In this document: positions 34,301-62,591 of the stretch, piece after piece
Numbering within the stretch: the first letter of the stretch is position 1
Layout: each line of letters starts with the position of its first letter
Origin: Heterodontus francisci
Lineage: Eukaryota
Assembly (NCBI RefSeq): GCF_036365525.1
Contig: NC_090395.1
Coordinates: 65,249,326-65,313,325 of the forward strand
Length of the DNA stretch: 64,000 nucleotides
Direction: 5' to 3'
Program-made: the position numbers and the translations under genes
Notes under the pieces: model-generated
What the model was told of the DNA's origin: nothing
What the model saw: the letters and a program-made list of their open reading frames with translations, nothing else
The model's database searches: none

Positions 34301-37300
34301 AAATCAGATTTTCAGCATCTGCAGTATTTTGCTTTTATTTTCTTGCACGAACTGTTAGGACCAGACAGTTCGGGCAATATACTCTGTCTGTCTTCTGGAG
34401 AAAAAGACTAGATTTATGGAAGTGGTGGGTTGATATGTGATGGAGGATGGGAGTGTGGGAGGGATCTTGTGGATGATTGATCAGGCTCAGCTTGCCTGTG
34501 ATAAGTCAGTAGATGCTTTTATTCTTGCTGCTGAATGATTGGCTATTGCATTCTGTGATTTGTCAGTATATGGTATTGTTGCTCCTGATTGGTCAGCTAA
34601 TCTATCCTCTGGTAGGTTAGTACATGTGAATATTCTTGCTGTGTGGTGGATCTTGAGTGTGTTGGGGGTTTGTATGTGTTGAAGTTGGTTGAACATTGGC
34701 TGCAGAGCAGTGGTGATATGATGCATGAGTAGGGGTAGCCAGATGTCACTCATCTCATCCATCACGTACCGGCATATTAGATACAACAGGGAGGTCCTGG
34801 AGATCTATCAACACCATATTGTCCCCACACACAGCGGCCTACTCATCAGTGACATCAGGATGAAGCAGCCCACATAATTGGCAAAGTATTCACCACCCTG
34901 AGCATTCACAGTAACGCACAGTGGCAGCAGTGTGTACCATCTACAAGATGCACTGCAGCAACTCACCACGCCTCCTTCAACAGCACCTTCCAAATGTGCA
35001 ACCTCTATCAGCTAGTAGGACCAATGGCAGCAGATGCATGGGAACACCACCACCTGCAAGTTCCGCTGTAAGCCACACAGTAACCTGACTTGGAAATATA
35101 TCGCTGTTCCGTCAATGTTGCTGGGTCAAAATCCTGGAACTCGCTTCTTAATGGCACTGTGGGTGCAGCTGCACCAGATGGATTGCAGTGGTTCAAGATG
35201 GCAGCTCACTACCACCGTCTCAAGGGCAATTAGGGGTGGGCATCAAATGCTGGCACTGCCAGCAAAACCCATATCCCAAGAAATGAATTTAAAAGGAAAA
35301 CACATCAGGAATATTAGCATGCACTGACTTACTACAGGATATATTTGCTGACCAATCAGGAGCAAGAACAATAGCTAATACTGACCAATCACAGAATACA
35401 ATAGCCAACCAATCATCAGCAAGAACAATCACATGTACCCACCAATCACAGAGACACTCAGCCTGACCAATCATCAGCAAGATCCCGCCCATCCTCCATC
35501 ACCAAAAAACCCACCTTTTCGACAGATTCAGTCTTTTCTCCAGAAGATGGGCAAAGTATGTTGCCTGAAATGTTCTTCTAAGTGATTGTCTTCAAGGAAA
35601 GATTGTCTCTTTTCTGAGCAATTCACGTGGTGTAAATCTTCAATTGTCTTACTGAAGATGCAGTTCTTGTTCATATTACAAATTGTTGTCTTTGAAGTAT
35701 TTTGTGAAGTTGCTGATTCAAATATTGTTTAACCACAATAATTTGCATTTATACAGCGCATTTAACACAATAAAACGTCCAAGGTGCTTCACAGGAGCAT
35801 TATAAAGCAAAATAAGATACCGACACACATAAGGAGATATTAAGTCAGTTGACCAAAAGTTTGGTCAAAGAGGTAGGTTTTAAGGAGTGTCTTAAAGGAG
35901 GCAAGCAAAGTAGAGAGGCAGAGAGGTGCAGGGAGGGTTTTCCAGAGCTTTGGGCCTCGGCAACTGAAGCTGCAGCCACCAATTGTGGAGCAATTAAAAT
36001 CAGGTTTGTTCAAGAGGCCAGAATTAGAGGAGCACTGATATCTCGGAGGATTGTGTGGCTGGATATGATTACAGAGATAGGGAGGGGTGAGGCCAGGGAG
36101 GGATTTGAAAACAAGGATGAGAATTTTAAAATCAAGTGTTGCTTGACAGGGAGCCAGTGTCGGTCAGCAAGCACAGGGATGATAGGTGCATGGGGTCTGT
36201 CGTAGTCACATAGGATGTCATTTGTGACTTTGATAAGAACTGTTTCGGTACTGTGGCAAGGGTGGAAACATAGAAACATGGGAAAATAGGAGCAGGAGTA
36301 GGCCATTCGGCCTGTCGAGCCTGCTCCACCATTCATTGTAATCATGGCTGATCATCCAAACTCAGTAACCTGTTCCTGTTTTCTCCCCGTATCCCTTGAA
36401 ACCTGACAGGAAGGATTCAAACATGGAATTCCAGGAAAGATGGGAAATGGATTTGGGAGGCGACAACACCTTCAAGGACTTTGGAGAGGAAAAGAATTCT
36501 GGATGGAACCCTACGTGAATTGGGTGCAAGTAGAGGGACCTAATTTCTGTGGGGGTCTGATATCCAACACAGCAGCAGGTTTAATGGGACGCTGTACCAA
36601 TATTTAACATATCCAATAATGAGCTGCTAAACTACCCAAACCCCACCCTCCGAGGACTTCACAGGAGCCAGAAAGCTGGCAGAGCCAGGCTGAGAGCACC
36701 CACTGTATGGGCACTCTTGAGGTAGACATGACATGAAAATTGTTCCTCTTTTCATGCAGCATAGCAATGAGAAATGTAGTATGAGGACAGGAAGATTAAG
36801 ATAGTTTCTTTGTGACACTGTTGGTATGTTAACACACACACAGCATTGCAAAATAAGGATGTGAGCTGTGCAGATTGGTTCACAACAGAGCATTTGGGAA
36901 ATAGTTATCGAGGGGCTGGTTGTAGAGCTCACCATGAAAAGCCACAGGTCTATCAGCTCTGAGCTGGTACTGAGAAATATGGTCAAATAATTCCTAGTAA
37001 ACTCATAAGTCACCTGACAAATGGTTTTAAAAAAAAATGATTTATTTGAGTTTCAGAGGTTGGGTAAAACACAATATGAAGAAACACTTGAGGCACCCAT
37101 TCAATTTCTGTTCTGATGCAATTCATTTTTGCTGAATTGAAGTCACAGATTGTGTTTTTCTTTCTCCAAATCTACTTCAGTTCTAAACATTAGTATTTCA
37201 CACAGTTTGTCTTCTAAGAGACAAATGTGTTCGAGGTTCACCATTTTTCTATGCAGTCTTCAGAAGGAACTCTATGTGAAGCGCCTTGGATCATTTTAAC

Positions 37301-37671
37301 AAGTTGCATTATGTCGCATCGTTAACTTAGTGTTCTAAATAAAAAGGAAATGCAGTTAGATTCCTGCCATTGATAAGGAGCTAGAGTTTCAGGAAGGACA
37401 GAGCTGCAACAGGAAAGCACAGAAAGAAGAAAAGGTGATTGAAGATACAGGAGAAGCAGATGAATATCATAAAAATGAACTGATAAGACCAAGTGTGGTT
37501 CACCTTTCGCTCACCACAACAGAATTACGGGCGACAGAGTAAGTAGAAGTTTCTGGTCTTCACCAGCTCTGATGACAAAAGTGCTTTTTCATAACATTAA
37601 GGAACAGGATTTTAAAAAAGAGACTTACTTGATGCAGACATAAGAATCAAAAGAGCAATTAATTCCATCAT
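16228..37671 (-). CDS. Gene A: inhibitory CD300/pIgR-like (CMRF35-like) single-IgV receptor, ~297 aa; exons 37629-37671, 33322-33645, 31885-31993, 26445-26522, 21233-21348, 18310-18362, 16228-16398
   Basis: All introns are GT-AG and the phases chain 1,1,2,2,1,0 into one 894-nt ORF: leader, IgV, Thr-rich stalk, TM, ITIM tail. Confidence 0.88.
18310..18362 (-). CDS. Gene A cytoplasmic exon 1 (GTNEQSITAVENPAATCK)
   Basis: ttttactttacag acceptor and gtaaga donor; phase 1 to 0 exactly bridges the TM and ITIM exons. Confidence 0.75.
19940..20430 (+). mobile_element. CR1 3' fragment
   Basis: RKNFLTRRAVTIWNALP...FKRELD motif and a ttctatgattctgtgat tail. Confidence 0.8.
21233..21348 (-). CDS. Gene A transmembrane exon (uncharged)
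   Basis: ttttgcag acceptor and gtatgt donor; reads RKGSAFPWQVILSVVVVIILLLLIVAVILYLKVKQQKKS. Confidence 0.88.
23024..25630 (-). mobile_element. L1/Tx1-clade LINE, 5'-truncated and degenerate, inserted in a MITE-like element (~22820-26310)
   Basis: NWRPISLLNVDYKILSK, GVRQGCPLSP and YMDD motifs; C-terminal CPRGGCGGEETVVHLLLEC zinc knuckle. Confidence 0.88.
26445..26522 (-). CDS. Gene A stalk exon 2 (RSIIGPTTWTTGTTEALTTFHSTGTN), phase 2-2
   Basis: ttcttcccgttgtctccag acceptor and gttagt donor; paralogous to stalk exon 1. Confidence 0.65.
26534..31369. mobile_element. PIF/Harbinger transposon relic: Myb/SANT gene (+, ~26882-27163) and HARBI1-like transposase (-, ~28500-29500)
   Basis: APRISDASLQDLLQAA...AWTEIMEEVS...WLQCR (Myb/SANT) and KVTVALNIYATASF...GISQSAAYRCIRKVT, FINGKGFHSLN (transposase). 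Degenerate terminal inverted repeats gggaagaattttaa / gggctgtattttaa. Confidence 0.8.
29897..31049. mobile_element. AT-rich solo-LTR-like insertion inside the Harbinger element (second copy at 51570-52722)
   Basis: tgtgat...atcac(t) ends, flanks tcct/tcat, abrupt GC shift. Confidence 0.5.
31885..31993 (-). CDS. Gene A mucin-like stalk exon 1 (GPVLRTTMGPTTKVTETTEASVTTALTTAFHRTGTT)
   Basis: ctgttatag acceptor, gttagt donor, phase 1 to 2, Thr-rich. Confidence 0.82.
33322..33645 (-). CDS. Gene A IgV exon, CD300/pIgR type
   Basis: GGSVTVDC, KQWCKGYYYLSC (second Cys pair), RFSLTDN and DEGYYWC; caacag acceptor, gtaaga donor, 324 nt, phase 1-1. Confidence 0.93.
34370..35570. repeat. Diverged inverted repeat (arms ~34370-34645 and ~35300-35570, CCAAT-rich) enclosing a LINE 3' fragment
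   Basis: The arms align as reverse complements (e.g. tcttctggagaaaa and gctcctgattggtcagc). Confidence 0.65.
37629..37671 (-). CDS. Gene A leader exon (MMELIALLILMSAS)
   Basis: Hydrophobic signal peptide with gtaagt donor; phase 1 matches the IgV exon. Confidence 0.88.
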
Positions 37672-37754
37672 TCTGGACTGTTTCTAGCAGGTGAATTAAC
37701 CGTGCTCAGACATCTGAGCTTTGCTTTCTTTGAGTCGGTTGGTTTTTGTAGGTC

Positions 37755-37762
37755 ACTTCCTC
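37755..37762 (-). promoter_or_regulatory. PU.1/Ets motif GAGGAAGT ~85 bp upstream of the leader ATG (copies at 58727-58734, and AAGGAAGT at 62677-62684)
   Basis: Consensus match retained in the diverged paralogous promoter; typical of leukocyte receptor promoters. Confidence 0.45.
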
Positions 37763-40189
37763 ATTCATCCTGTAGTCAAATAAACCATTTCCTCTTTCAC
37801 AATAAGGACGAGGTCTGGGGCCAAGTGCAAACGCTGAACCCATGCTCCCCACCCAGAATAAAGGACTGGGGTCTTATTTTAAGTGGTTTGAGACACTTAC
37901 CCCCATTACATTCAGAGACTTAGCAGTAAATTCATGAAATCTCTTTTTCACGCATATTTATGCAACCTCTAATACACAGTATTCACATACAATACTGTTT
38001 TATACTCTTATTACACATTCATACTTCTACAAGCTTACTCACAACATTTATAAAAAGAAAATATTCTCCGCTGATTCTATCACCATGACAACAGAAAAAT
38101 GGCCACTGAGGAAGTTGTAACTTTCCCCCAAATTTCTTTGAAGAATTTAATTTTCTCGAAGTATTTATGTGCAGGACTTAAACAAGCTATGATGTGTATT
38201 CTGATTAACAAGAACACTGGTGAATGAAGCAATTAGAAAAGTTTATAATCCTAAAAGCAGTAATGATACATTTCTCACCCTTCTCTTTTCCAGTGAGAAG
38301 ATGGCTAATTTATATAATTGCTCCTCATAATTCAATCCTTCCATCCCTCCATTCACTCAGTCATTCTGGTTGCTCTCCTCTGCATCCTTTCAGTAGCTGC
38401 AATATCCTTTTGTACCACCTGTCCGTTATATTGGAGGCTTAAATTTGCACCCGAAAATGTACTTAGCATTATCGAGGTTTTAGGCCAATATCTGAGTGCA
38501 TGCCTTAAATGAACAAAGTCGCTCTGCTCCCTCTCTCGATGTGTACTTCTAAATAGCATATCTTGTGAGAACATCACTGGTTGTGCAGTGTGAGAGCAAA
38601 TGTCTTCACACCTTTGACCCTTATCATCTGGAAAAGCTGTATAGCTTGGTAGCTTGATATCAAACTGGTAATTATATATGACGTCAAAGATGAATGTGGA
38701 AAGTAACCAATTTGTCCTATGACCATTATGGTGCAAAGACAGTCGATTGTTCTGTAGTGAAAATACAGTAAAAGAGTTTTGCATAAAGAGGTAACCTGGA
38801 TCTGTGCTGACTGAGGTAAGAAGGACTTCACTTGTAAACAAGTTACTTGTGTAATGTGTACATCACTAGCAGTTTATTAGAACAGACTAGAGAAACAACT
38901 ACACAGTGAGGCCTTTATCTTTTTTTTAATTCATTCATGGGATGTGGGCATTGCTGGCAAGGCCAGCATTTGTTGCCCATCCCTATTTGACCTTGAGAAG
39001 GTGGTGTTGAGCTGCCTTCTTGAACCACCTCGCCCTCCTCCAGATTCTAAACTTAATTTAGGAAGATAATTGACCAGTTCAACAAAACTTTAACAAAGAT
39101 TGGTCTTGGGCTGTTCCTTTGTTTACTTTCTTTCTCACTGAGGCAAATGGAGTTCAAGTGAGCAGAGCGAAAACATCTATGTATTCTCGTATGTGGTTGT
39201 AAATTTCATGGCTTTGCAACCTGATGTAATTTGGTCAATTTGCCTTTTAAAGCACTCTGAAGGGAAGGTATTCTAAAGTGGGTTTTCTTTTTACCTTTGC
39301 TGTTTGTACACGATTAACATTTTTGCAGATTTGAAAAGAATTTACCTTTTTAGGGAGACTAATTCAGGGTGAGCATCTTCTGTCTTGCCAGCATTTGAAG
39401 GAATCGATGTCCTGATACTGCCATCTCCATGTTGCATCTGCTGCTCACAAACTCATCCATGTCCTCCATTTGTATTTTGCTTGTTCTGTGGCTTCCAGGA
39501 TGACTGATGGCAGAAGCCAAATAAATCGCAGCTTGAAAAATGAATAATAAAATTTGAGAAGTATCTGTTAAATGCAGTGTGGTGTAAAAGTCGGAATCAT
39601 ACAGAATGCGTTACTTTGTCTGGTGGTGTGAGCAGGATATTTTGGAGTGATGACAGAGCAGTGACAAACCTGTGCAAGTGCTGCTGGTAAACCCCATTCT
39701 GTGCATGTTATACTAACCTCATGCTCGCAATCCTGTTGGGTGGCTCTTTAGTGTGATGCTTTCCTGTCTTTACCACTCCTGAACCAACATTATGATTCTG
39801 AGGGTGCCGAGCACCCACGTGACCTTATGCCATCTAAGGTTGATATTCTCCATTAGGATTCTTGGCTTAAGTCGCATGTGTGTGTTTCGGAGAGTGGAAC
39901 GATCAATCAGATTGAGTTTATCCTTGAATGTACCACGTTTGTCCTCTAATCTTCATTTTATTTTCTTCCTTCCTCACTGCATTACCCTCACTCGAGCAGT
40001 CCTGTGTTTCAGTTTGTGCCATGCCACCTAACCAGTTTTTTTAAAAGTTGGTGAGTTCCAGGGAATTTGTGATTTTATGGAATTATCCTAGGTCTGCAAT
40101 AATTCTTTATTGGAGCTGTTAAAAAAGTTCTAATACGCGGGAATGAGTGCAATCTTTCAAACGAGGAGTCTGGAAAATTTGAAGGTTTT

Positions 40190-46154: not shown

Positions 46155-49100
46155 CTGGAAAACTGAATAAAATTTGATTTGAAGCAATTGAGCTTAAATA
46201 ATTGAATTGAATTCACACTTCAAGACATTCTGGCCAAAAATATGTCGATGAGCGGGTGGGTAGGGATATTCTGGTGTAAGTGCTGAGGTTCACCTGCCAT
46301 TACCTCTGCTCTTGATACTGTTTGACTTTCTTGGGGTTCGGGAAGCTTTCTATTGTGCATGTGGGTGCCCACAGCACTAGGGCACATCTTGTGTGCCAGG
46401 TTGCACAACGTAACATATGGTGTCTGGTCCAAGAGAGGAGATGGTGCTCCTTCCCATCCCCTGCTCAAGTTCGCCCTTGTGTGGGAGGAGGGATGCATTT
46501 TTATTGCAAAAGAATTCATTCCGTTCTGGCCGAGACATCCAGGTTTGTTATCTGAGTTAATGGTCTACTGCTATGACAGTTCCATCTTAGGACCATTGGA
46601 AGTCTTCGCTCCTTCCTATGCCTCTGGCTTGATTGGCAGAGACTCAAGGCCCCACCTTAGTTAATTATTGTAAAAGCCTGAGATGGTGCTGCAGAGTTTC
46701 ACGATATATGTGGCGGTAGCACAGAAGCAGAAATTTTACCTTGTTTTGCCCATAGATCAATTATATATTGACAACAATATCACTTGCACTTACATAGCTC
46801 CTTTACTGTAGAAATAGGTCCCAAGATGCTTCACAGGAGCATTATCAAACAAAATTTGACACCAAGCCACATAATGTGATATAAGGCCAGATGAGCTTGG
46901 TCAAAGAGCTCGGCTTTAAGGAGCATCTTAAATGAGAAAAGAGAGGTAAAGAGGTGGAATGGTTTAGGGAGTGAATTCCAAAGGGCCAGCGCCAATGGTG
47001 GAGGAATTATATAAGCACTCAGGTGGCATTAGAAAATTATATGGATAGACTTCATTCGACACACTTGGTCTCAGGTTACACTCCCATGTTTGATACTGGG
47101 TCAAGCAGCAACAAAACTACAGTCAGTTCTGTTCTGTAACCAGTCACATCAGTCAGTAACAGATGTACGTGAGTGATTTGTATCAAAGCCAATTTTGATC
47201 TTTTTCTCTCTTAGATTCCCACATGAAACCGAGAACTCCACACTAACCGGCATTTTTAACCTTTCTGTTGATAAGCACAAATTTCACCGCGAAAAGCCAT
47301 TGTCATAACACTAGAATGATGGCAATGCATCCGTCACAAAACTAATGAGCAGCAGTTATTTTCTTTTGGGTTATTTGCTGCTTTTCTCGGCAAGTTTCAA
47401 ATTGCTTGAGCTTTTGGACTGAAATGAAATAATTTTGAATATTACAGTGATAAGATTTAAAATATTATACCTGGGCCTTCTGCAAAGCATGTGACTGAAA
47501 CTGTGCAAATCACCAGAGCACCAACGAGAAGCCAACGGAATATCGGCCATATACGGTGACTCTTCAGTTTATCATCTCTGATTAAACAAGGAACTATAAT
47601 TAATAAACTACAAAATATTTTATACCTGAAGTTGAGAAATACATTTCAATCACATGGAGACAGGTAGGTGGTGGGATCCCCACCTGCCACCAACTCGCCC
47701 GATTATACACTCTCCCTGCCTTCAAACCTGACACTCTTCCCACCCAGAATGGAGAGGTTGGGAATTTCCCGATCAGTGATCCCTGGAAACTCTGAGTTAT
47801 TTACAGAAATATGGTAACGATGCAGAATATTGATTTCAACTTTTCAGACACTAACCTGTTTGTTCCAGTGCTGTGAAAAGTGGTGAGAGCTTCAGTAGTT
47901 CCTGTTGTCCAGGTGGTTGGGCCTATTATTGACCTGGAGACAACGGGAAGAATTTTAAATTGACAACGCGGCTCTTTGCGGCAGCACCGGAGGTCGTGCT
48001 GTCGCCCCTTTGGTGAAATACAGCCGGGTGACCGTGATCATGCAGCAGCCAGCCAATTAAGGATGGGGTGGGAGGACCCACTGCAATCAAGGACCTGAGG
48101 TGGGAAAGGGACACCAATGCTGCCATCATCTCACACAACGTCAGGTGCTGGCACCAGATATAAAGGGTTGCCAGCCCTGCACTCACTCCTGGATGTAAAG
48201 AAAGCCTTCCCGAGTGCCCTGTGTTGCTCGGACATTGTCTGCTGCCTATGCTGCATAATAAACAAGGTGCTGATTGCAAGCCTGCACTGGCCATGGCTGA
48301 AGGAAGACCCTGGGTGGCCCCACGGATTAGCGATGCCTCCCTGCAGGATCTCCTCCAGGCTGCAAGGGAAAGGCGGGAGGTCCTCTTCCTCAAGGACAGG
48401 AGGAGGAGACCTGCCCTCCTGACCACGCAAGCCTGGACAGAGATTATGGAGGAAGTCAGCAGCCGTGGAGCCACCCCCAGGGCATGGCTCCAGTGCAGGA
48501 ATTGGGGCAATGGCCTCATCCAGGCTAACTGCAAACACTTTGGACCCTTTGGGTATTGCATGTGTCTCAGCTGAGAGAGAGCATTTGGAGGAAAGTGTGT
48601 GGCCACCCAGTCATGTTGATTGGGGAAGAGCAGCAGGACCTGATGCCTGTGGCTGGGCTGCATCTCGATTAGGGGTGCACGTCAGTCATTGTTAAACCCT
48701 ACACAGTCGCTCGGTAGGGGCCGCATGTAGGAGGTGTATGTGTGACCCCATCATGGCCCACTGGACTATCACCATCAGAAGTCAGGGGCATTTTCCCGCT
48801 GGGAGACTAACTTTGTTCATCTTTCTGTCTGCAGCAGAAGACAGCCCCAATAGGAAGGAACATGCCAGCGCTGGACTCCCTTATCTCCATGTCCTCACCC
48901 TGATGTAGGAGGAAGCCATGGAACAGACTGGGCGCAAGGTGACCAGACCAGAGCTGATGGTGAGGCGGGGGCACTGATCCAAGACAGTGAGTGAGCATCG
49001 CCTGGGGTACAAGGGTGTATCTGGTACTAAAGAGCCATAGTGTGCCTGTAATCACCACTGCATCAGTGGAGCTGCACAGTTGGGGTGGTTGGAATGTGAC

Positions 49101-52100
49101 AATGGGCAGATCCTAACCCTTCAATGTCGATGTTTTCTTATGCAGGTAAAGCTGAATGACATGGGAGAGGGGCTGGAGAGACTGGGGGACAGCCGGCCAT
49201 CTCAGAGAAGGAGAAGGGAGCCTCAGAGGTGCACCATCACATCATTCCCACCAACAGGTGAGGCAACAGTGGACAATGGAGGAGCATATCCAGGCCCTGG
49301 GTGCTGCACTCTCTCTGCCAATCACATGACTGGCTCCCTCCATTGCAAGGTTCAGAGGCAGACCTGCACACCATCACTTTGTCTGTGAGCTCTATGAATT
49401 GGTGGCAAGGAGAGAGGGGGATGAGGCATCTGAAGTCTCCACCGGACACATGTCCCTCTCAGGTCAGCAGGGAAGTACAAGCGTGCTTCATAAAGGGGGA
49501 AGGGAAGGAGCAGCTTCCTCCTGAATCAAGGGTCTCCTCTCAGGGTTTTCCTGGTGTGGGCAGTAGCTCCAAAGCCCCTCTGCTAGTGATGCCAGCGCCA
49601 GATTGTGAGGCAGGGGCACCGAGCCAAGACGATGAGTGAGCATCGCCTGAGGTACAAGGGTCATCTCGGATGACAGAGGTGGTCCCTGCACCTGTGCAGG
49701 AGGCTCTCAGTGTTCTGGGGCCCCCCCAGGCTTGAGGTAGCCAGAGGACGACCACATAGGGCATCCCAAACCAGGAGGCAGCAAGGCCAGCTACCAGCCT
49801 GCCTCAGCCTCAGCTGCCAGTGCAGGGGGCAGAACCACATTGGAGAACCCAGAAAAGTATTAAAAAGAGCATCAAAATGCACTTAGGGGATCATGGGTGA
49901 AGATGCAGTTGAGGTGGGTAGTTGTGCATTTTGTGTGACGCTGAATAAAGAAATGATGTTCACTCACTTTCTGTGATGTCCTTTGGGAACTCATTTAAAC
50001 CCTTCCTCCCAAGGAGCTGGTATTGAGGGACCAAGCCCCGAGTGCTCATCCTTTGGCTTTGTCACTATGTGAAGTGCACCTGGGTGCTGCAGTGCGGAAG
50101 GAAGGAGGCGACAACAGGGCTGTTTAAAGGTAAGGCTTTATCGTTGTGGTTCTAGAAGGTGGTAAGGCTCAAAGGAAATGTGAATATAAGGGCGTCTCAT
50201 GCCTCCCTTACGCGTATCTCATGGCACGTGTTCTGCTCTGCTTGGGACCGTTTATCTGGCACTGCTTGGGCAACATCCTCCTCCCCATCCTTGTCATCAG
50301 AAGAGGCATCACACTCCTCAATGGTCATTGTCTCCGCCCCTCAGTAGTGCCAGGTTGTGCAGTGCACAGCAAACCAACTCAATATGCGTAACCCTTGCCA
50401 GGGCATACTAAAGGGCTCCACGGCATCGATCTCGGCACCAATGGCCTGCTCAATTGTTGCTCAGGTTAACACATTGCAAGTGTACCTCTCCTCTGCATCT
50501 GTGTGTAGGTTTCTCTCAGGCATCAGGAGCCATGTTCTCAGTGGACAGGCCTGGTCTCCAAGGACCTATCCCTGAAGGGATGTGGGGCATGGAAAAGGTT
50601 GGGCACCTGTGATTGACTCTTAGTCTGTAGGCATCATGGCTGCTTCCTGGGAGTTGTGCACACACCTGCAAGATCTGTTTGAGGTGGTTACACTCCATAT
50701 GTTCATTGAGTGAGTGGAAGCCCTTCCCATAATGAAGGGAGCAGGCTGGTCAGTGGAAGCCTTGATGGTCACATGCATGCTTTGATGACCCACTGCACCT
50801 GGGGGAATCCAGCGATGGCCCTGAATCCTATAGCCTGTTTGGATCGTTGCGGAAGCACACATAGTCGCCAGCCTTCCTGAATATGGCATTAGTGACCTTC
50901 CTTATGCAGCGATATGCCGCGGACTGGGAGATTCCACGCGTATCTCCAGTAGATCCCCGGAATGATGCAGTGGCGTAGATGTTCAGTGCTACGGTGACCT
51001 TCAGTGCCAAAGACATCAGGTGCCCACCAAGTCCCATCGGGCTCAGATCATCCTGCATCATGGCACACAGAGCATTGAAGGCCTCCCTGGAGAGACAGAG
51101 TCTTCAAAAACACTGCCTCTTGGACATCTGCAAGTAGTTGATTCTCGGCCGGTATACCCTCTCTGAAGGGTAGCTTCTTCTGCCTGCAGAAAGGAGCTGG
51201 TGTGCCCTCTGTATCCTTCTACAAACTCCAGAGCCCGAGGGAGGACCTCCTGTGTACCCCCAGACTGTGGTATGCCCCTCCCAGTTCATGCGCCTCCCTC
51301 CCCTTCTGCTGCTCCTCCTCCTCAGTAGTGGTCTCAAAGCCAGGGTCTCAAAGCCAGGGTGAATGAGGCCCATGAGAGTTTGCTTCTCCCTAAGTACAAG
51401 ACCTTCAAGGTAGATGGACCCCCTCCCCCACCCTCACATCCCCTTACTTGTGACCTCCGATGATGTGGCACTGCCCATATGGTACACTCGTATGGCTTCC
51501 TGCAGTGCTGGCACCTTGGCCCCCTCAGCCTTCACTACCAAGCAGTGCTGCCTCACTTGATTGCTTCCTTGTGATAGGTATAAAAGTCTGAATTAAGTAG
51601 AATTTGGAAATAGTGTATTATGCCTTTTAGAGTTAGAGATTGAATGGATGGTCAGTTTTTAGAATTCACTGCCATTCCCCTTTAAGAAGGTAGAGTTAGA
51701 AAATGTCAAGGTCACTGTTATGAAGCAGAAACAAGTTGGGAAATCCATTTGTGTCTCTGTTGTCAGGACCTTGGAAGATAAACACACACATTGAAATATC
51801 CTGTCAGTAAGAGGTAGCAACAGACTTAATTGGTTTGTGGGTTTGTGCAGACAGGTTGGCTCCAGAGGTTGCTTTGAGGTGCCATGGAAAGGGCAATTAT
51901 AGATAATGAAACAATAAATGGAATGTAGTCACAGGAATAAGAAAGGTTAAGTAAACACAATTATAAACATTTTGACCAGATAAATGCTCACATCTTCAAC
52001 AGCAAAGGAAGTTCATTAAGTGGAAATGCTAATTAAAGATACGGATTTTAAAAGGAAGACAGGAAGGTCACATCTATGCTAAAAGTCAGATGACACTTCA

Positions 52101-55100
52101 GAAACAGTATAAACATGAGAGGTTTTTGAAGCCAAATTTAGAAATGTTGAATCCTCAAACAACGCTATGCAATGAAGGGACATTTAAGGTAAAAAGTTTA
52201 CTTTACATTTTTATGGATATTCTGGATATTCTAAGATATTTTTGCTGTAACATTAGTAAGGTTAAACTTTTGGATTCTATGTTAGAAATAAGATTATGTG
52301 TTACATCTTTTAGTCATATTTGATATTGTTATATACTTATCCACTGAAGTGTATTGCATGTTAAATTCTTTAATAAATCTATAAAAGTCAATAAATCATC
52401 TCACGTAGCATTCTGTATGCAACCACAAAGAACCCCCTTTCTGTATCTCTTTAAGTGGAGAGATATGTATTGAAGAGAATTCTCAGACCCTTATAATATC
52501 TGGGATATTTATGACTTAGCTTATTTTAATAATTACGGCTATCTGAAAGATGGTAATATTCTCTGTTGGTTTTCTTTATTTGAGTGAAAACTAGTACAAT
52601 TCTTTGGAGCCAAATAAGTGTCTCTGAGAATTTGTCTGGTTTGAACTTGATTAAAGGAGATTCAAAGGGATGTACTCCTGATTTGATTTAGTCCCTATTA
52701 GGGATTAAAGTCATAAATCACTTCATCCCAGTGACGCCAACACTGAGCTCCTGTATCCTTGTCACCTCCTTTCACCAGTCGAGGCCCGGAAGCCCTGTGA
52801 TTTCCATCCATCATCAGATAAATGCACAATGGAGAACAATATTGCTGTGTATTGGGCTCTCATGTACCTTAATTGCCTTCCCGCCTTGTGGATGTATGAC
52901 GTCCGCCCTCCATGTTGATTGCCAACAGTAAAATCCAGAAGGGATGTCACGATGTCGAACTTCCTGTCTGATGCCTCCTGTCCCTATTTTATGCCCCCCC
53001 GCCCCCCACCTCTGTTCCCCTCAAACGGCCCCTTAAAATACAGCCCAATATTGCTGTAAGAGACTGGGATTGATTTTATGCAAACCGACTCCTGTCTTCC
53101 CATTTCCTGAACTTTTCAACACCTACTGCTAGGGCCCCAGAAAAAATTGGAACGCTGAACATGTTGGTGAAGTAAAGCCCACTTCCCGTGGGCTCTGGAA
53201 TATTTGCTCTTCGACTGTAAAAGAAGAGGAAGATCAGCCCAGGGAAATATAAAGGATATGAGTAGGACATCTCAACATAGCAGTGTGGAAAAGAAAGGAG
53301 AAAAACATGAATTCTATCAGTCTAATTTAGTTAATCTCTGTAAAGAAAAGGTGGGTTTTATCAGAAACCCTTGAAATCTGCTTTAGTGCCAAAGCTAAAA
53401 AGAATAGAATCAATTGTAAGTTTCACCACAGATTACAAAGGGTCTGGAATCTGTATAATGTATTTGTCCCTCCAGTTCAGCATTTTAAAAAGGACTCAGT
53501 TAGTTGAAGATTACTTTCATACTTATGACACAATATTGAATTCAACTTTTAAGAGACTAACCTGGTTGTTCCAGTTCTGTGAAAAGCAGTGGTGAGAGCT
53601 GTAGTAACAGAAGCCTCAGTAGTTTCTGTCACCTTGGTGGTTGGGCCCATTGTTGACCTCTGTACTGGGCCTATAACAGATGAACTTGCTGATCATTTTA
53701 TCCCGAAAAGCACTTTTCATATACAGTTTACTCCTCTTAATTGAGTCATATAATGATCTAATCAATCATTTTTAAAAGGAATTTCCCACTTTGTATTGTT
53801 TGTGTTGCTTAATTCAAATGATCAGATCATTCCTGCTTTTTTAGGGAAACATTTGACTGAATTAGCAGCACTGGACTGTGGCACAAAAGGATGAAATCAG
53901 AGACACCGACAACAATATACATGGCTAGTGAATTTCAGCTTGGTGGCTCCTAGCTGAATATCTGGTGCTGGTTTTCCTCCTCCTGTGTGAGTTGGCAGAG
54001 GTTCTGATCACAGAGCGATCGATTGGCATTGGGGAAGTGACACGATAACAACGGGTTGTATTTTACCAGCCCACTGGAGACAGGCTGGGAGGTGGGAGGC
54101 TGCAGAAGACGGCAGCGAAAGGTGTCAGGAGGGGAGTCCATGTTTCCTCGCTGCCATGGGATATTACCAGTGACGGGAAGCTCAACGGTGCTGCCACCAG
54201 CTGAGCAGAGGCGGACGGCCAATTAAACCAATTAGTTGCTCAATTAAAGGCCACTTCCCATTCTGGCAGCCTTCCCGGGGTGGGGGTCCTCCTGTACGGC
54301 CACTCCCTGGTCCATGAGGGATCCCTGGCGCCCCCAAGGCTATGTTGCCATCGCTGGAGGGTGCAGCCCTATGACCGGGTCTGTGTGCCTGAACCCAGCT
54401 TGGTAAAACAAAACCTATCTTGCCTTTGAGGGTGCCTCAGGATGGAGGTTCCCTATCCTCCTTCCTGCATCCTCAGCAGTGGCCACTTCTATCGGTGGTG
54501 CTGCTGAGACTGCTGAGCTATCGGCCCTCTGATTGGGCTGGCAGCTTGGCGAGGCGGCCCCCATCCTCAATTGGACAGCAATGACGGCCGCAGCCTCTTA
54601 ATTGCCCACTGCTGCTAAAATGCCACCCAGTGTCCCTCTGCTCACCCACGTGGGTTCAGGTCTTGCTTTCGGCCCTGGCGACAGGACAACCCTTTCGATG
54701 AGAAAATTCCGGCTGTGAACAGAACAATTGCCAGCGAAATCCTTTCAGTCGGAACATGTTTTTCCAGTCTGTTTCTCTTGCCTCCTTCCTGACGGAGTGG
54801 AAGGATCTTGCTCTGGAAATCCAGTGTCCCCATGAGCCGGGTACCCCAGTAAATGGGCGTCCACCCCTTTGGTGCAAATGAACCTGCCCCTGGGATTAGC
54901 ACAGGGTTACTGTCAGAGCAAACTGGGGAGAATTTCTGGTTTTAAATGTTTCAATTTGGACAGAATAAATGAAATAGAAATACATTAGTCATCTTACCTT
55001 CAGAAACTTCTAATTTTACAGACATCTTGATATTTTGTCCAAGTGTTGGCATTTCTATCACACACCAATAATATCCTTCATCATTCTTCGTGAGGTTATC

Positions 55101-58100
55101 CATGGTTACTGAAAATATCCTTTGTGTTTTGTTATCAGTCAGTGAGAATCTTCCTTTTTTTGGTTTATCAGTAGAAACCACCACCTCAGAAGATAAGTAA
55201 TAATAACCTTCACGCCATTGTTTAACATGGTCCTTGTAATTCCGATCATACTGACAGTCCACAGTGACTGATCCTCCCAATTCACCATGAACCTTCTCGG
55301 GTCCAGTTAATTGAAATGAACCTGTTGGCATATTAATGATGAAAGATTATTAACAACTCTGGCAGGATCAACAAAAACAGTATTTCATCAAATAAACACT
55401 GCTGTTCCTGTTGTTATGGCAATCTTCATTGTAATTACAGATCGAATCCCATTTTTAATATCAAATTCTTTCTGCTGATTCTCATGTCACCAGCACTGTT
55501 ACTGAAATTATTGCATATACTCTGGTTTTGATCCTGATTTTCCTCAATATGGAGTCCTGTGATTTCCTGTTGTGAGCTGGTTGTGGAGCCAGATTCCCCA
55601 CAATCACTGCATTCTGACAAAATCATTCCTGTCATCATTGTTGATTTATATTCTTTATTTACACAGATCATCGCTATTCAGACAAACTAAAAATCTTTCA
55701 GAAAAACAATTTCTTTCATTCTTTCTGACAGTTTCTCTCAGTCTGCCCATTTCTAAGCCCAGTTATTTTATTTCACTTTCTACAGTTGAGTTATCTGGGC
55801 CTAAACTGCTTTTTCTGATCATAGAAACAGTGAAACATTTGGAACAGGTGTGGGCCACTCACCCGCCTTGGCTCCATATCCCTCGATGAAAGGTTACAGA
55901 CCTGAAACGTTAACTCTGTTTCTCTCTCCACAGATGCTGCCTGACCTGCTGAGTATTTCCAGGACTTTCTGTTTATAAATCAGATTTTCAGCATCTGCAG
56001 TATTTTGCTTTAATTTCTTGCACGAACTGTTAGGACCAGACAGTTCGGGCAATATACTCTGTCTGTCTTCTGGAGAAAAAGACTAGATTTATGGAAGTGG
56101 TGGGTTGATATGTGATGGAGGATGGGAGTGTGGGTGTAGCTACACCAGATGGATTGCAGTGGTTCAAGATGGCAGCTCACTACCACCGTCTCAAGGGCAA
56201 TTAGGGGTGGGCATCAAATGCTGGCACTGCCAGCAAAACCCATATCCCAAGAAATGAATTTAAAAGGAAAACACATCAGGAATATTAGCATGCACTGACT
56301 TACTACAGGATATATTTGCTGACCAATCAGGAGCAAGAACAATAGCTAATACTGACCAATCACAGAATACAATAGCCAACCAATCATCAGCAAGAACAAT
56401 AACATGTACCCACCAATCACAGAGACACTCAGCCTGACCAATCATCAACAAGATCCCGCCCATCCTCCATCACCAAAAAACCCACCTTTTCGACAGATTC
56501 AGACTTTTCTCCAGAAGATGGGCAAAGTATGTTGCCTGAAATGTTCTTCTAAGTGATTGTCTTCAAGGAAAGATTGTCTTTTTTCTGAGCAATTCACATG
56601 GTGTAAATCTTCAATTGTCTTACTGAAGATGCAGTTCTTGTTCATATTACAAATTGTTGTCTTTGAAGTATTTTGTGAAGTTGCTGATTCAAATATTGTT
56701 TAACAACAATAATTTGCATTTATACAGCGCATTTAACACAATAAAACGTCCAAGGTGCTTCACAGGAGCATTATAAAGCAAAATAAGATACCGACACACA
56801 TAAGGAAATATTAAGTCAGTTGACCAAAAGTTTGGTCAAAGAGGTAGGTTTTAAGGAGTGTCTTAAAGGAGGCAAGCAAAGTAGAGAGGCAGAGAGGTGT
56901 AGGGAGGGTTTTCCAGAGCTTTGGGCCTCGGCAACTGAAGCTGCAGCCACCAATTGTGGAGCAATTAAAATCAGGTTTGTTCAAGAGGCCAGAATTAGAG
57001 GAGCACTGATATCTCGGAGGATTGTGTGGCTGGATATGATTACAGAGATAGGGAGGGGTGAGGCCAGGGAGGGATTTGAAAACAAGGATGAGAATTTTAA
57101 AATCAAGTGTTGCTTGACAGGGAGCCAGTGTAGGTCAGCAAGCACAGGGATGATAGGTGCATGGGGTCTGTCGTAGTCACATAGGATGTCATTTGTGACT
57201 TTGATAAGAACTGTTTCGGTACTGTGGCAAGGGTGGAAACATAGAAACATGGGAAAATAGGAGCAGGAGTAGGCCATTCGGCCTGTCGAGCCTGCTCCAC
57301 CATTCATTGCAATCATGGCTGATCATCCAAACTCAGTAACCTGTTCCTGTTTTCTCCCCGTATCCCTTGAAACCTGACAGGAAGGATTCAAACATGGAAT
57401 TCCAGGAAAGATGGGAAATGGATTTGGGAGGCGACAACACCTTCAAGGACTTTGGAGAGGAAAAGAATTCTGGATGGAACCCTACGTGAATTGGGTGCAA
57501 GTAGAGGGACCTAATTTCTGTGGGGGTCTGATATCCAACACAGCAGCAGGTTTAATGGGACGCTGTACCAATATTTAACATATCCAATAATGAGCTGCTA
57601 AACTACCCAAACCCCACCCCTCCGAGGACTTCACAGGAGCCAGAAAGCTGGCAGAGCCAGGCTGAGAGCACCCACTGTATGGGCACTCCTGAGGTAGACA
57701 TGACATGAAAATTGTTCCTCTTTTCATGCAGGATAGCAATGAGAAATGTAGTATGAGGACAGGAAGATTAAGATAGTTTCTTTGTGACACTGTTGGTATG
57801 TTAACACACACACAGCATTGCAAAATAAGGACGTGAGCTGTGCAGATTGGTTCACAACAGAGCATTTGGGAAATAGTTATAGAGGGGCTGGTTGTAGAGC
57901 TCACCATGAAAAGCCACAGGTCTATCAGCTCTGAGCTGGTACTGAGAAATATGGTCAAATAATTCCTAGTAAACTCATAAGTCACCTTACAAATGGTTTT
58001 AAAAAAAAATGATTTATTTGAGTTTCGGAGGTTGGGTAAAACACAATATGAAGAAACACTTGAGGCACCCATTCAATTTCTGTTCTGATGCAATTCATTT

Positions 58101-58643
58101 TTGCTGAATTGAAGTCACAGATTGTGTTTTTCTTTCTCCAAATCTACTTCAGTTCTAAACATTAGTATTTCACACAGTTTGTCTTCGAAGAGACAAATGT
58201 GTTCGAGGTTCACCATTTTTCTTTGCAGTCTTCAGAAGGAACTCTATGTGAAGCGCCTTGGATCATTTTAACAAGTTGCATTATGTCGCATCGTTAACTT
58301 AGTGTTCTAAATAAAAAGGAAATGCAGTTAGATTCCTGCCATTGATAAGGAGCTAGAGTTTCAGGAAGGACAGAGCTGCAACAGGAAAGCACAGAAAGAA
58401 GAAAAGGTGATTGAAGATACAGGAGAAGCAGATGAATATCATAAAAATGAACTGATAAGACCAAGTGTGGTTCACCTTTCGCTCACCACAACAGAATTAC
58501 GGGCGACAGAGTAAGTAGAAGTTTCTGGTCTTCACCAGCTCTGATGACAAAAGTGCTTTTTCATAACATTAAGGAACAGGATTTTAAAAAAGAGACTTAC
58601 TTGATGCAGACATAAGAATCAAAAGAGCAATTAATTCCATCAT
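46072..58643 (-). CDS. Gene B: activating-type CD300/pIgR-like receptor, ~247 aa; exons 58601-58643, 54998-55321, 53562-53670, 47856-47933, 47471-47577, 46072-46154
   Basis: GT-AG introns with phases 1,1,2,2,1 give a 744-nt ORF; Arg in the TM; short tail without ITIMs. Confidence 0.8.
47471..47577 (-). CDS. Gene B transmembrane exon with charged Arg
   Basis: cttgtttaatcag acceptor and gtataa donor; reads RDDKLKSHRIWPIFRWLLVGALVICTVSVTCFAEGP; phase 2 to 1 as in the gene A TM exon. Confidence 0.8.
47856..47933 (-). CDS. Gene B stalk exon 2
   Basis: Identical to 26445-26522. Confidence 0.65.
47945..53046. mobile_element. Duplicated PIF/Harbinger relic
   Basis: Same insertion site and ORF fragments as 26534-31369 (48221-48574 Myb/SANT; 50828-51061 transposase). 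Confidence 0.8.
53562..53670 (-). CDS. Gene B stalk exon 1 (GPVQRSTMGPTT...)
   Basis: Two substitutions relative to gene A; splice sites intact. Confidence 0.82.
54998..55321 (-). CDS. Gene B IgV exon lacking the second disulfide (KQWREGYYYLSS)
   Basis: Five substitutions relative to gene A; canonical Ig Cys/Trp and splice sites intact. Confidence 0.92.
58601..58643 (-). CDS. Gene B leader exon (identical to gene A)
   Basis: MMELIALLILMSAS followed by gtaagt. Confidence 0.85.
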
Positions 58644-59447
58644 TCTGGACTGTTTCTAGCAGGTGAATTAACCGTGCTCAGACATCTGAGCTTTGCTTTC
58701 TTTGAGTCGGTTGGTTTTTGTAGGTCACTTCCTCATTCATCCTGTAGTCAAATAAACCATTTCCTCTTTCACAATAAGGAAGAGGTCTGGGGCCAAGTGC
58801 AAACGCTGAACCCATGCTCCCCACCCAGAATAAAGGACTGGGGTGTTATTTTAAGTGGTTTGAGACACTTACCCCCATTACATTCAGAGACTTAGCAGTA
58901 AATTCATGAAATCTCTTTTTCACGCATATTTATGCAACCTCTAATACACAGTATTCACATACAATACTGTTTTATACTCTTATTACACATTCATACTTCT
59001 ACAAGCTTACTCACAACATTTATAAAAAGAAAATATTCTCCGCTGATTCTATCACCATGACAACAGAAAAATGGCCACTGAGGAAGTTGTAACTTTCCCC
59101 CAAATTTCTTTGAAGAATTTAATTTTCTCGAAGTATATATGTGCAGGACTTAAACAAGCTATGATGTGTATTCTGATTAACAAGAACACTGGTGAATGAA
59201 GCAATTAGAAAAGTTTATAATCCTAAAAGCAGTAATGATACATTTCTCACCCTTCTCTTTTCCAGTGAGAAGATGGCTAATTTATATAATTGCTCCTCAT
59301 AATTCAATCCTTCCATCCCTCCATTCACTCAGTCATTCTGGTTGCTCTCCTCTGCATCCTTTCAGTAGCTGCAATATCCTTTTGTACCACCTGTCCGTTA
59401 TATTGGATATATTGGTTATATTGGGTAAAACACAATATGAAGAAACA

Positions 59448-61965: not shown

Positions 61966-62551
61966 GGGGCGGGGGGGGGGGGGTGGGCAGGGTGTGAGGG
62001 GCACCCATTCAGTTTCTGTTCTGATGCAATTCATTTTTGCTGAATTGAAGTAACAGACAGTGTTTTTCTTCAAATCTATTTCAGTTCTAAACATTAGTAT
62101 TTCACACAGTTTGCCTTCTAAGAGACAAATGTGTTCTAGGTTCACTATTTTTCTATGCAGTCTTCAGAAGGAACTCTGTGTGAAGCGCCTTGGATCATTT
62201 TAACAAGTTGCATTATATCGCATCGTTAACTTAGTGTTCTAAATAAAAAGGAAATGCAGTTAGATTCCTGCCATTGATAAGGAGCTAGAGTTTCAGGAAG
62301 GTCAGAGCTGCAACAGGGTAGAAGTAACCAGATGGGAAAGCACAGAAAGAAGAAAAGGCGATTGAAGATACAGGAGAAGCAGATGAATATCATAAAAATG
62401 AACTGATAAGATCAAGTGTCGTTTACCTTTAGCTCACCACAACAGAATTACAGGTGATAGAGTCAGTCATGGTTTCTGGTCTTCACCAGCACAGTTGACA
62501 AAAATAGTTTTAATAACATTAAGGAATAAGATTTTAATAAAAGAGACTTAC

Positions 62552-62591
62552 TTGATACAAACGTAAGAATCAAAAGAGCAATTAATTCCAT
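62552..62591 (-). CDS. Orphan diverged leader exon (MELIALLILTFVS), probably the native first exon of the activating gene
   Basis: gtaagt donor, phase 1. Flanking 61995-62840 is a diverged paralog of gene A intron 1 and promoter (37090-37920). Confidence 0.75.

What the first reader, a model, noticed from the sequence alone, without database searches (positions are those of the whole stretch)
54998..55321. Both cysteines of the family-defining second disulfide lost in the activating copy; all coding differences are nonsynonymous
Seen: the 324-nt IgV exons differ at 5 sites: C>R (55214), K>E (55211), C>S (55189), M>T (55090) and V>G (55039). Stalk exon 1 differs at 2 sites (L>Q, T>S). I found no synonymous difference. 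Established: the C-x7-C bond braces the C-C' region in CD300/pIgR/TREM domains. Inference: paired loss avoids a free thiol and, with the charge change in the same loop, suggests selected remodelling of the binding surface. Seven of seven nonsynonymous is suggestive but not statistically strong alone.
Basis: partly seen in the sequence, partly recalled or inferred. Interest (0 to 1): 0.8.

Follow-up and report, generated by a model that had tools for sequence, protein, structure and literature searches.

The report
Shark receptor copy lacking cleft disulfide
One of two nearly identical horn-shark immune-receptor genes, the "on-switch" copy, is actively expressed but lacks the extra disulfide bond that floors the ligand pocket in related receptors. 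This is a real but already familiar kind of variation in this receptor family.

Summary
The minus-strand exon 54998-55321 (copy B) and its twin 33322-33645 (copy A) differ at 5 of 324 bases. All five are nonsynonymous: C36R, K37E, C44S, M77T, V94G. Stalk exon 1 differs at 2 sites.

B is neither an error nor a dead gene. Spliced RNA-type contigs from two runs match B exactly. NCBI already annotates it as a CMRF35-like (CD300-like) activating receptor of Heterodontus francisci.

- **Rates:** nonsynonymous divergence (1.6-1.9%) equals intron divergence (1.15-1.8%), so rates show no selection.
- **Stalk changes:** both are derived in A, not B.
- **Polarity of C44S:** a related species appears to carry Cys36 with Ser44, so it is unclear whether B lost both cysteines.
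- **"Family-defining":** the bond is common, not universal. Of 439 related domains, 26 lack both cysteines and 12 lack one.

Still, 4 of the 5 differences lie in the C-C' and F-G loops. In mouse CD300lf these loops form the lipid-binding cleft, and this disulfide is its floor. The catshark activating partner also has Arg at position 36.

This is a new member of a known kind. Earlier scan notes describe similar receptor pairs elsewhere in this genome, but not this cysteine loss.

The parts
54998..55321 (-). IgV exon of gene B (activating copy). It has the canonical Cys22/Cys86 and Trp35, with Arg36, Glu37, Ser44, Thr77 and Gly94 at the five sites that differ from A.
   Evidence: Pfam V-set E=2.1e-15. 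RNA-type contigs with 0 other letters.
33322..33645 (-). IgV exon of gene A (inhibitory copy), with W-C36-x7-C44.
   Evidence: 100% match to XP_067913486.1.
55188..55214 (-). Codons 36-44 of B, the end of strand C and the C-C' loop. This 27-base stretch holds three of the five differences (55214, 55211, 55189).
   Evidence: Strand assignment from the AlphaFold2 model.
55089..55091 (-). Codon 77: ATG (Met) in A, ACG (Thr) in B. In B this creates an N75-L-T77 N-glycosylation sequon that A lacks.
   Evidence: The sequon was read directly from the translation.
55038..55040 (-). Codon 94: GTA (Val) in A, GGA (Gly) in B. It lies in the F-G (CDR3-like) loop.
58601..58643 (-). Leader exon of B, identical to A's leader at 37629-37671.
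   Evidence: The loose end of the RNA contigs beyond 55321 reads into this sequence.
62552..62591 (-). Older leader-exon copy, about 89% identical over its surrounding region to the A and B leader regions. NCBI isoform X2 of gene B (P0163) uses it.
53562..53670 (-). Stalk exon 1 of B. It differs from A at 53661 (Q vs L) and 53656 (S vs T). By outgroup comparison B keeps the ancestral residues.
   Evidence: Spliced to the IgV exon in contigs.
47856..47933 (-). Stalk exon 2, identical in A (26445-26522). It is optional in the annotated isoforms.
   Evidence: The loose end after stalk exon 1 in run X1 reads into it.
47471..47577 (-). Transmembrane exon of B with an arginine in the membrane span. 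It lies just outside the duplicated segment and is conserved in the activating genes of three other sharks.
   Evidence: The Carcharodon sequence was seen.
47655..59407 (-). Duplicated segment B: promoter, leader, IgV exon and both stalk exons.
26244..38435 (-). Duplicated segment A. Gene A continues downstream with an uncharged TM exon (21231-21347) and ITIM-bearing tail exons (18310-18360, 16231-16398).

Best explanation
Genes A and B are a paired inhibitory/activating CD300-like (CMRF35-like) receptor pair of the horn shark.

Shown:
- A segment of about 12 kb carrying promoter, leader, V-domain exon and stalk exons is present twice, at 95.7-99.2% identity.
- Copy A runs on into an uncharged TM and a tail with three ITIM-type motifs.
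- Copy B runs into an old, conserved TM exon with an arginine and a 10-residue tail.
- B is transcribed and correctly spliced.
- Its V domain differs from A's at five residues. Four of them lie in the C-C' loop (R36, E37, S44) or the F-G loop (G94). The fifth, T77, creates an N-glycan sequon.

Inferred:
- In mouse CD300lf these two loops form the lipid head-group cleft, and the Cys36-Cys44 bond is its floor. Replacing that bond with Arg/Ser, next to a Lys-to-Glu charge reversal, therefore most likely changes or weakens binding of whatever ligand A recognises.
- The result would be an activating receptor that no longer mirrors its inhibitory partner.
- C36R and K37E arose on the B lineage. Whether Ser44 arose in B or was inherited is open.
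- Whether the changes were fixed by selection or by drift cannot be decided from this sequence.
For: - Duplication and different 3' ends.
- Intact, identical splice sites.
- NCBI models XP_067913487-90 (B) and XP_067913484/86 (A).
- Spliced contigs with 0 other letters over B's IgV and stalk exon 1, with a 53669->54997 joint that has GT..AG ends, at depth 237-896 in 2 of 2 same-species runs laid.
- Loop positions from the models (strands 32-37, 45-49, 82-89, 97-106).
- Best structural matches are mouse CD300lf chains, TM 0.87-0.91.
- The cleft-floor role of Cys36-Cys44: PMC6166816 passages.
- Clustering of 4 of 5 differences in 16 loop residues, P=0.002.
- Polarity of positions 36, 37 and 77.
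- A parallel in Scyliorhinus canicula. The activating P0106 has R36/S44 and its 85%-identical inhibitory partner P0157 has C36/S44. 6 of their 17 differences lie in the same loops (P=0.03).
- Cysteine-less domains persist in skate, sawfish, catshark, sturgeon and paddlefish, so the fold tolerates the loss.
Against: - No rate evidence for selection. dN is about equal to the noncoding rate, and zero synonymous changes is unsurprising (about 1.5-2.3 expected, P=0.10-0.23).
- A B-lineage excess is only borderline even if all 5 changes are B's (Poisson P=0.018-0.088). It vanishes if positions 44 and 94 are not B's.
- The loop-clustering test is post hoc, and loops are also the least constrained parts of Ig domains.
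- Substitutions are clumped in introns too, for example 4 within 19 nt at 55386-55404.
- An intact reading frame says nothing at about 1-2% divergence.
- AlphaFold2 gives the same confidence for A and B (94.9 vs 94.7), but it is insensitive to such changes.
- No ligand, adaptor or protein-level datum exists.
- My reads call did not show the IgV exon linked to the TM exon. That link rests on NCBI's models.
- All RNA-type runs come from the same sample as the genome.
Confidence: 0.5

Rival explanations
1. Neutral drift under relaxed constraint. After the ectodomain was copied, the activating copy was redundant, so its V domain accumulates any substitution. Once one cysteine was hit, the other was freed from constraint. 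No new function is implied.
For: The nonsynonymous rate equals the noncoding rate. By outgroups A's V domain shows no derived change at 36, 37 or 77 while B changed, as expected if only A is constrained. Primate CD300C, the activating partner, is repeatedly degraded or lost (PMC12447643, abstract and passages). Substitution clumps also occur in introns.
Against: B is among the deeper contigs in two runs and is correctly spliced. Its TM exon is conserved across four shark orders. 4 of 5 differences lie in the two cleft loops, not spread evenly. The same C36R state occurs in the catshark activating partner.
Confidence: 0.3
2. The common ancestor of A and B had a single cysteine (Cys36 with Ser44). 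The two copies then resolved the unpaired thiol in opposite ways: A regained Cys44 and B lost Cys36. On this reading B lost only one cysteine after the duplication.
For: Contigs of a related species (runs X9 and X10, two studies, about 93% identical over the exon) read A's letters at 55214 and 55211. No difference from B is listed at 55189, although both contigs span it. 19 of the 20 differences are listed, and the table omits differences near the ends of pieces. Cys36/Ser44 domains are annotated in S. canicula P0157, Narcine P0001 and Heptranchias P0011.
Against: The inference rests on the absence of a table row. More distant sharks have Cys at 44 in 4 of 7 rows. The maximum-likelihood tree puts zero length on A's branch. 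A precise Ser-to-Cys reversal on a very short branch needs strong selection. Parsimony counts two changes under either scenario.
Confidence: 0.25
3. A short gene-conversion tract from a cysteine-less paralogue elsewhere in the receptor cluster introduced R36 and S44 together.
For: Three differences lie within 26 nt. The same residues, R and S, occur in cysteine-less domains of catshark, sawfish and skate. Earlier scan notes list many CD300-like paralogues within 500 kb. These were not checked here.
Against: Every base between the three changed sites (19 and 2 bases) is identical to A, and a diverged donor should have brought further changes (read directly). Glu37 occurs in none of the cysteine-less relatives seen. 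tblastn found no other IgV exon in the 64-kb window. 3 of 5 changes falling within 26 nt is not unusual (P=0.14).
Confidence: 0.08
4. Sequencing or assembly artefact, or two alleles mis-assembled as paralogues.
For: None beyond the high similarity of the copies.
Against: Both copies lie 21.7 kb apart on one contig and have different 3' exons. Contigs from independent libraries reproduce B exactly. NCBI models exist for both copies.
Confidence: 0.01

Closest known systems
Mouse CD300lf / CLM-1 V domain (PDB 5ffl, 1zox, 6e47 and others)
   Same: It is the best structural match to the B model (TM 0.87-0.91, 37-39% identity). It has the same W-C36-x7-C44 register as copy A. Its Cys36-Cys44 bond floors the phosphocholine/norovirus cleft between the CC' and CDR3 loops (PMC6166816).
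   Different: B has Arg36/Ser44 in place of the bond. No ligand is known for either shark protein. I did not see a residue-by-residue alignment to the CD300lf chain; the register is inferred from the conserved W-C motif.
Primate CD300A / CD300C paired receptors
   Same: An inhibitory/activating pair whose ectodomains are kept alike by gene conversion. The activating member is the evolutionarily labile one. The second disulfide is reported lost in Lemuriformes and Lorisiformes (PMC12447643, passages).
   Different: The mammalian activating TM carries Glu, while the shark one carries Arg. In the shark the loss separates the two members of one pair within one genome. Figure 5 and the supplements of that paper were not seen.
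Scyliorhinus canicula CMRF35-like molecule 3 (P0106) and molecule 1 (P0157)
   Same: Same architecture, leader and TM motif. The activating member has R36/S44, and the inhibitory member is 85% identical over the V domain.
   Different: The catshark inhibitory member already lacks Cys44 (single cysteine). The pair differs at 17 V-domain positions against 5 here.
'Atypical' teleost NILT Ig domains and pIgR domain 2
   Same: These are V domains of the same superfamily group that lack the CxnC pair. 39 of 127 zebrafish NILT domains are of this type (bioRxiv 10.1101/2022.04.21.489081, passages). The pIgR domain-2 row has no cysteine in the C-C' stretch.
   Different: They are old, diverged domains, so the change cannot be dated or polarised. 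Here the cysteine-bearing twin sits 21.7 kb away at 98.5% identity.
Skate and zebrafish MDIRs (modular domain immune-type receptors)
   Same: They are described as multigene activating/inhibitory families of cartilaginous fish with CD300/TREM/pIgR-like V domains (PMC3031540, passages).
   Different: No MDIR sequence was compared here. The original MDIR paper was not in the library searched, so membership is not tested.

Membership tests
CD300 / CMRF35-like (pIgR-TREM-NKp44 group) V-domain receptors | V-set Ig domain with the canonical Cys pair and the invariant Trp | tested here: met
   Pfam V-set E=2.1e-15 for B and 1.3e-16 for A. C22, W35 and C86 are present.
CD300 / CMRF35-like (pIgR-TREM-NKp44 group) V-domain receptors | Second, C-C' disulfide (W-C-x6-9-C) | tested here: not met
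   A has C36-x7-C44 and B has R36...S44. The feature is typical but not universal: 401 of 439 related domains have it.
CD300 / CMRF35-like (pIgR-TREM-NKp44 group) V-domain receptors | Fold closest to solved CD300 or pIgR D1 domains | tested here: met
   The top 10 Foldseek matches are CD300lf chains (E about 1e-12, TM 0.86-0.91), followed by pIgR D1, CD300a and CD300c. The sequence search of the PDB agrees.
CD300 / CMRF35-like (pIgR-TREM-NKp44 group) V-domain receptors | Single V domain, Ser/Thr-rich stalk, TM, then either an ITIM tail or a charged TM with a short tail | tested here: met
   A has an uncharged TM and the motifs VTYATV, STYINV and VEYSTV. B has Arg in the TM and a 10-residue tail without Tyr.
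CD300 / CMRF35-like (pIgR-TREM-NKp44 group) V-domain receptors | Binding of polar lipids in the CC'/CDR3 cleft | not testable with these tools
   Known for mouse CD300lf (PMC6166816). No data exist for the shark proteins.
Paired activating/inhibitory receptors with homogenised ectodomains | Neighbouring genes with near-identical ligand-binding exons and unrelated signalling exons | tested here: met
   12-kb segments at 95.7-99.2% identity. The TM and tail exons lie outside them.
Paired activating/inhibitory receptors with homogenised ectodomains | The activating member associates with an ITAM adaptor through its charged TM residue | not testable with these tools
   Only the TM arginine is seen.
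MDIR (cartilaginous-fish modular domain immune-type receptors) | Sequence relationship to the described skate MDIR1-5 | not tested
   No MDIR sequence was fetched. The family is known to me only from passages in PMC3031540 and from recall.

The most novel reading that the evidence does not exclude
In shark CD300-like pairs the activating gene's ectodomain is repeatedly overwritten by its inhibitory neighbour's. It is then 'de-tuned' by the same route, removal of the disulfide that floors the lipid cleft. This is seen independently as C36R in the activating partner of both Heterodontus and Scyliorhinus canicula. It may start from a single-cysteine intermediate that the inhibitory copy repairs and the activating copy abolishes. 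That would be a predictable, repeatable molecular path by which an activating receptor escapes the ligand of its inhibitory twin.
Probability: 0.2. Interest if true: 0.65.

Novelty: new member of a known kind. Interest (0 to 1): 0.4.

Why it matters
Paired immune receptors raise an old question: how does an activating copy that shares its binding domain with an inhibitory twin avoid being triggered by the twin's own (often self) ligand? Here the twins are only 1.5% apart in the V exon, so every difference can be listed, and most differences lie in the pocket that binds ligand in the mammalian relative. That gives a small, testable set of five residues for binding and folding experiments in an early-branching vertebrate. 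It does not reveal a new kind of receptor, and the loss of this disulfide is already documented elsewhere in the family.

Tried and rejected
- **Rate tests for selection** (Nei-Gojobori site counts, Fisher tests against introns). All were non-significant, so the claim of selected change is not carried by rates.
- **Lineage-specific excess on B**. It is borderline only if all five changes are B's, and the polarity of positions 44 and 94 is not secure.
- **A conversion donor in the window.** tblastn with six shark proteins found only the two known IgV exons. The rest of the genome could not be searched.
- **AlphaFold2 on A and B**. The two models are indistinguishable, which is no test of folding without the bond.
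- **Clustering of 3 changes within 26 nt.** Not unusual (P=0.14), and introns show similar clumps.
- **Literature searches** for shark CD300 or CMRF35-like paired receptors. They found no paper on these shark genes in the library searched. Subscription journals are largely missing, and the original MDIR paper was not found.
- **Supplementary files.** They were closed and I did not ask for them. The NILT preprint's supplementary figures S4-S7 and the supplements of PMC12447643 and PMC6166816 may bear on how often, and where, the motif is lost.

Full report
**What is there.** The window is from the horn shark Heterodontus francisci. The proteins it encodes match NCBI models of that species exactly. 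A self-comparison shows one segment present twice on the same strand:

| Copy A | Copy B | Identity |
|---|---|---|
| 26244-27545 | 47655-48956 | 95.7% over 1302 nt |
| 27539-34459 | 49177-56134 | 97.3% over 6972 columns |
| 35151-38435 | 56122-59407 | 99.2% over 3286 nt |

Both genes run on the minus strand. I mapped the NCBI proteins back onto the window to get the exons:

| Exon | Gene A | Gene B |
|---|---|---|
| Leader | 37629-37671 | 58601-58643 |
| IgV | 33322-33645 | 54998-55321 |
| Stalk 1 | 31885-31993 | 53562-53670 |
| Stalk 2 (optional) | 26445-26522 | 47856-47933 |
| TM | 21231-21347, uncharged | 47471-47577, with Arg |
| Tail | 18310-18360 and 16231-16398 | short last exon near 46146-46162 |

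Gene A's tail carries VTYATV, STYINV and VEYSTV. Gene B's TM exon lies just outside the duplication, and its cytoplasmic tail is 10 residues long. All splice sites of the shared exons are AG/GT and identical in both copies. I did not run any search with a joined exon model. Searches were made exon by exon or with other species' database proteins.

**The observation.** A and B differ at 55214, 55211, 55189, 55090 and 55039, giving C36R, K37E, C44S, M77T and V94G, with no synonymous difference. Stalk exon 1 differs at 53661 and 53656. The leader exon and stalk exon 2 are identical.

**Is B real and expressed?** Four runs of the window's own species and sample, guessed to be RNA, hold all 26 sampled words of B's exon. 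I laid two of these four, X1 and X3, on 53450-55450.
- Each has a contig covering 54997-55321 with 0 other letters.
- In X3 the same 433-nt contig continues across a joint 53669->54997 (1327 nt skipped, GT..AG on the gene's strand) into stalk exon 1, again with 0 other letters. In X1 the same joint is seen (depth 896.4) and separate contigs cover stalk exon 1, also with 0 other letters.
- Intron bins have no depth, apart from low-depth contigs at repeats and at a minor cassette exon (54645-54888).
- The loose end beyond 55321 reads into the leader exon (compare).
- In X1 the loose end beyond 53562 reads into stalk exon 2.

So B-type message is spliced and present, at word depth 237-896. There are three limits. 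These are contigs, not reads. They come from the same individual as the genome. They do not reach the TM exon, so the link from the IgV exon to the arginine TM rests on NCBI's models XP_067913487-90. No A-type letters appeared at the five sites in X1 or X3, but contigs drop minor variants, so A's absence is not shown.

**Selection or drift?** There are 126.7 synonymous and 425.3 nonsynonymous sites in the shared coding sequence, of which 67.2 and 259.8 are in the V exon. Noncoding divergence of the aligned copies:

| Region (B coordinates) | Differences | Divergence |
|---|---|---|
| 50615-56111 | 58 of 5052 | 1.15% |
| 53000-56111 | 42 of 2667 | 1.57% |
| Whole duplicated segment | 196 of 10904 | 1.8% |

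- Observed nonsynonymous divergence is 5/260 (1.9%) in the V exon and 7/425 (1.6%) overall.
- Fisher tests against noncoding sites give P from 0.24 to 1.0.
- About 1.5-2.3 synonymous changes were expected, so finding none is unremarkable (P=0.10-0.23).
- The chance of 7 of 7 nonsynonymous is 0.16.

The coding sequence has therefore diverged at the neutral rate. This is compatible with relaxed constraint, or with a mix of constraint and adaptation. If all five V-domain changes were on B's lineage, 5 against 1.5-2.3 expected gives Poisson P=0.018-0.088. That rests on polarity.

**Polarity.** An alignment with seven shark and ray relatives gives the following:

| Position | State in the 7 relatives | Reading |
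|---|---|---|
| 36 | C in 5 | B derived |
| 37 | K in 6 | B derived |
| 77 | M in 4, T in none | B derived |
| 44 | C in 4, S in 3 | Unclear |
| 94 | Neither V nor G in any | Unclear |
| Stalk, L/Q site | Q in 3, L in none | A derived |
| Stalk, T/S site | S in 6, T in none | A derived |

- At the two stalk sites the relatives carry B's residues.
- A maximum-likelihood tree of 26 V domains puts length 0 on A and 0.056 on B. The trait columns were not removed before the tree was built.
- The nearest evidence comes from a coded related species (organism B, runs X9 and X10, from two studies). One spliced contig in each run has 20 other letters and 5 gap letters over the exon. Both read A's letters at 55214 and 55211, meaning Cys36 and Lys37. 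Both have a 3-base insertion behind 55197 that adds a Tyr codon, and third states at 55090 and 55039.
- No difference from B is listed at 55189. 19 of the 20 differences are listed. The smallest listed distance from a piece end is 21, so differences closer to an end appear to be omitted, and 55189 is 133 or more letters from either end.
- I therefore think it more likely than not that this relative has Ser at codon 44, that is Cys36 with Ser44. The tool warns that a missing row is not proof.
- If so, either Ser44 arose twice, or the A/B ancestor had one cysteine and A regained its partner. Both scenarios need two changes.

**How common is the loss?** A full HMMER search with A's exon found 2679 proteins at E<=0.001, and the best 150 were returned. 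In those proteins plus one cluster mate I found 439 distinct domains with the canonical cysteine pair:

| State | Domains |
|---|---|
| Both extra cysteines | 401 |
| Neither | 26 |
| First only | 9 |
| Second only | 3 |

- Joint loss is far commoner than independence predicts (Fisher P=4e-31). This is not corrected for shared ancestry, so it is only a description.
- Among the closest relatives, cysteine-less domains occur in catshark, sawfish and little skate. Single-cysteine domains occur in Narcine and Heptranchias.
- The tree needs at least 3 origins of the cysteine-less state, of which well-supported branches force 2.
- Published parallels exist. The second CD300 disulfide is reported lost in lemurs and lorises (PMC12447643, passages). 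39 of 127 zebrafish NILT domains lack any CxnC motif (bioRxiv 10.1101/2022.04.21.489081, passages).

'Family-defining' is therefore too strong.

**Why the position still matters.** AlphaFold2 models of B and A have mean pLDDT 94.7 and 94.9. In the B model the strands are at 32-37 (C), 45-49 (C'), 82-89 (F) and 97-106 (G).
- Positions 36, 37 and 44 therefore frame the C-C' loop, and position 94 sits in the F-G (CDR3-like) loop.
- The best structural matches are mouse CD300lf chains (TM 0.87-0.91).
[quoted passage not shown] The bottom of that cleft is composed of the Cys36-Cys44 disulfide together with five side chains (PMC6166816, passages).
- The register matches the shark W35-C36...C44. I inferred this from the conserved motif, not from a residue-level alignment to that chain.
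- Four of the five A/B differences fall within the 16 residues of these two loops (P=0.002, post hoc).

**A parallel pair.** In Scyliorhinus canicula the activating protein P0106 has R36/S44. It shares B's leader type and TM motif. An inhibitory protein, P0157, is 85% identical over the V domain and has C36/S44. The S. torazame inhibitory protein P0158 has both cysteines. The two catshark V domains differ at 17 positions, 6 of them in the same loops (P=0.03), and again at positions 36 and 77. White-shark and bamboo-shark activating proteins keep both cysteines, so the pattern is not general.

**History of B.** A third, older copy of the leader region lies at 62000-62841 and is about 89% identical to both others. 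It holds an intact leader exon at 62552-62591, which NCBI isoform X2 of B uses. B's TM exon is conserved in catshark, bamboo shark and white shark. This fits an old activating gene whose 5' part was recently replaced or supplemented by A's promoter-to-stalk segment.

**Verdict.** The two missing cysteines sit at a functionally meaningful place. The claim that both were lost in B under selection is not established. Rates are neutral. The polarity of one cysteine is doubtful. The stalk changes belong to A. Loss of this bond is a known, recurrent variation in the family. Both genes are already in NCBI's annotation. I rate it a new, unusually clean example of a known kind.

Noticed in passing
window 54645-54888 (minus strand): A minor 244-nt cassette exon inside the IgV-stalk intron. 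One X1 contig joins 53669->54645 and 54888->54997 with GT..AG ends at depth 19.7, against 896 for the main joint. X3 has a piece at 54697-54891. Its length is not a multiple of three, so it would shift the frame.
   Followed up: no
window 62552-62591 and 62000-62841: A third, older leader/promoter copy (about 89% identical) lies upstream of gene B. Its intact leader exon is used by NCBI isoform X2 (P0163). RNA contigs in the two runs laid used the younger leader type instead.
   Followed up: partly
window 46075-46212 (minus strand): An alternative 3' exon gives a TM-less, probably secreted isoform of B (P0164). Similar C-terminal peptides appear in Mustelus, catshark and bamboo-shark models.
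   Followed up: no
window 48126-50614 vs 26.7-28.9 kb: Inside the duplicated segment, a GC-rich stretch is 4-7% diverged, while its neighbours are 0-1.5% diverged. It also carries 42-nt and 228-nt indels. The cause could be uneven conversion or fast-mutating sequence.
   Followed up: no
window 34460-35163: A 704-nt stretch is present in copy A and absent from copy B. Nearby sequence (34365-34644) is an inverted match to 56271-56544, so it is probably a repeat insertion or deletion.
   Followed up: no
window 59607-60485 and about 23300-25700 (minus strand): Long reverse-transcriptase-like open frames (LINE fragments) lie upstream of the duplicated segment of B and inside the stalk-TM intron of A.
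   Followed up: no
proteins P0157, P0001, P0011 (catshark, Narcine, Heptranchias): These annotated V domains keep the first extra cysteine but have Ser or Arg at the second. Across all 439 domains, 9 keep only the first and 3 keep only the second, which hints that the C' cysteine tends to go first.
   Followed up: partly
protein P0008 (Carcharodon carcharias): One 572-residue model fuses an activating and an inhibitory receptor whose V domains are nearly identical to each other. This is another homogenised pair, here with both cysteines kept.
   Followed up: no
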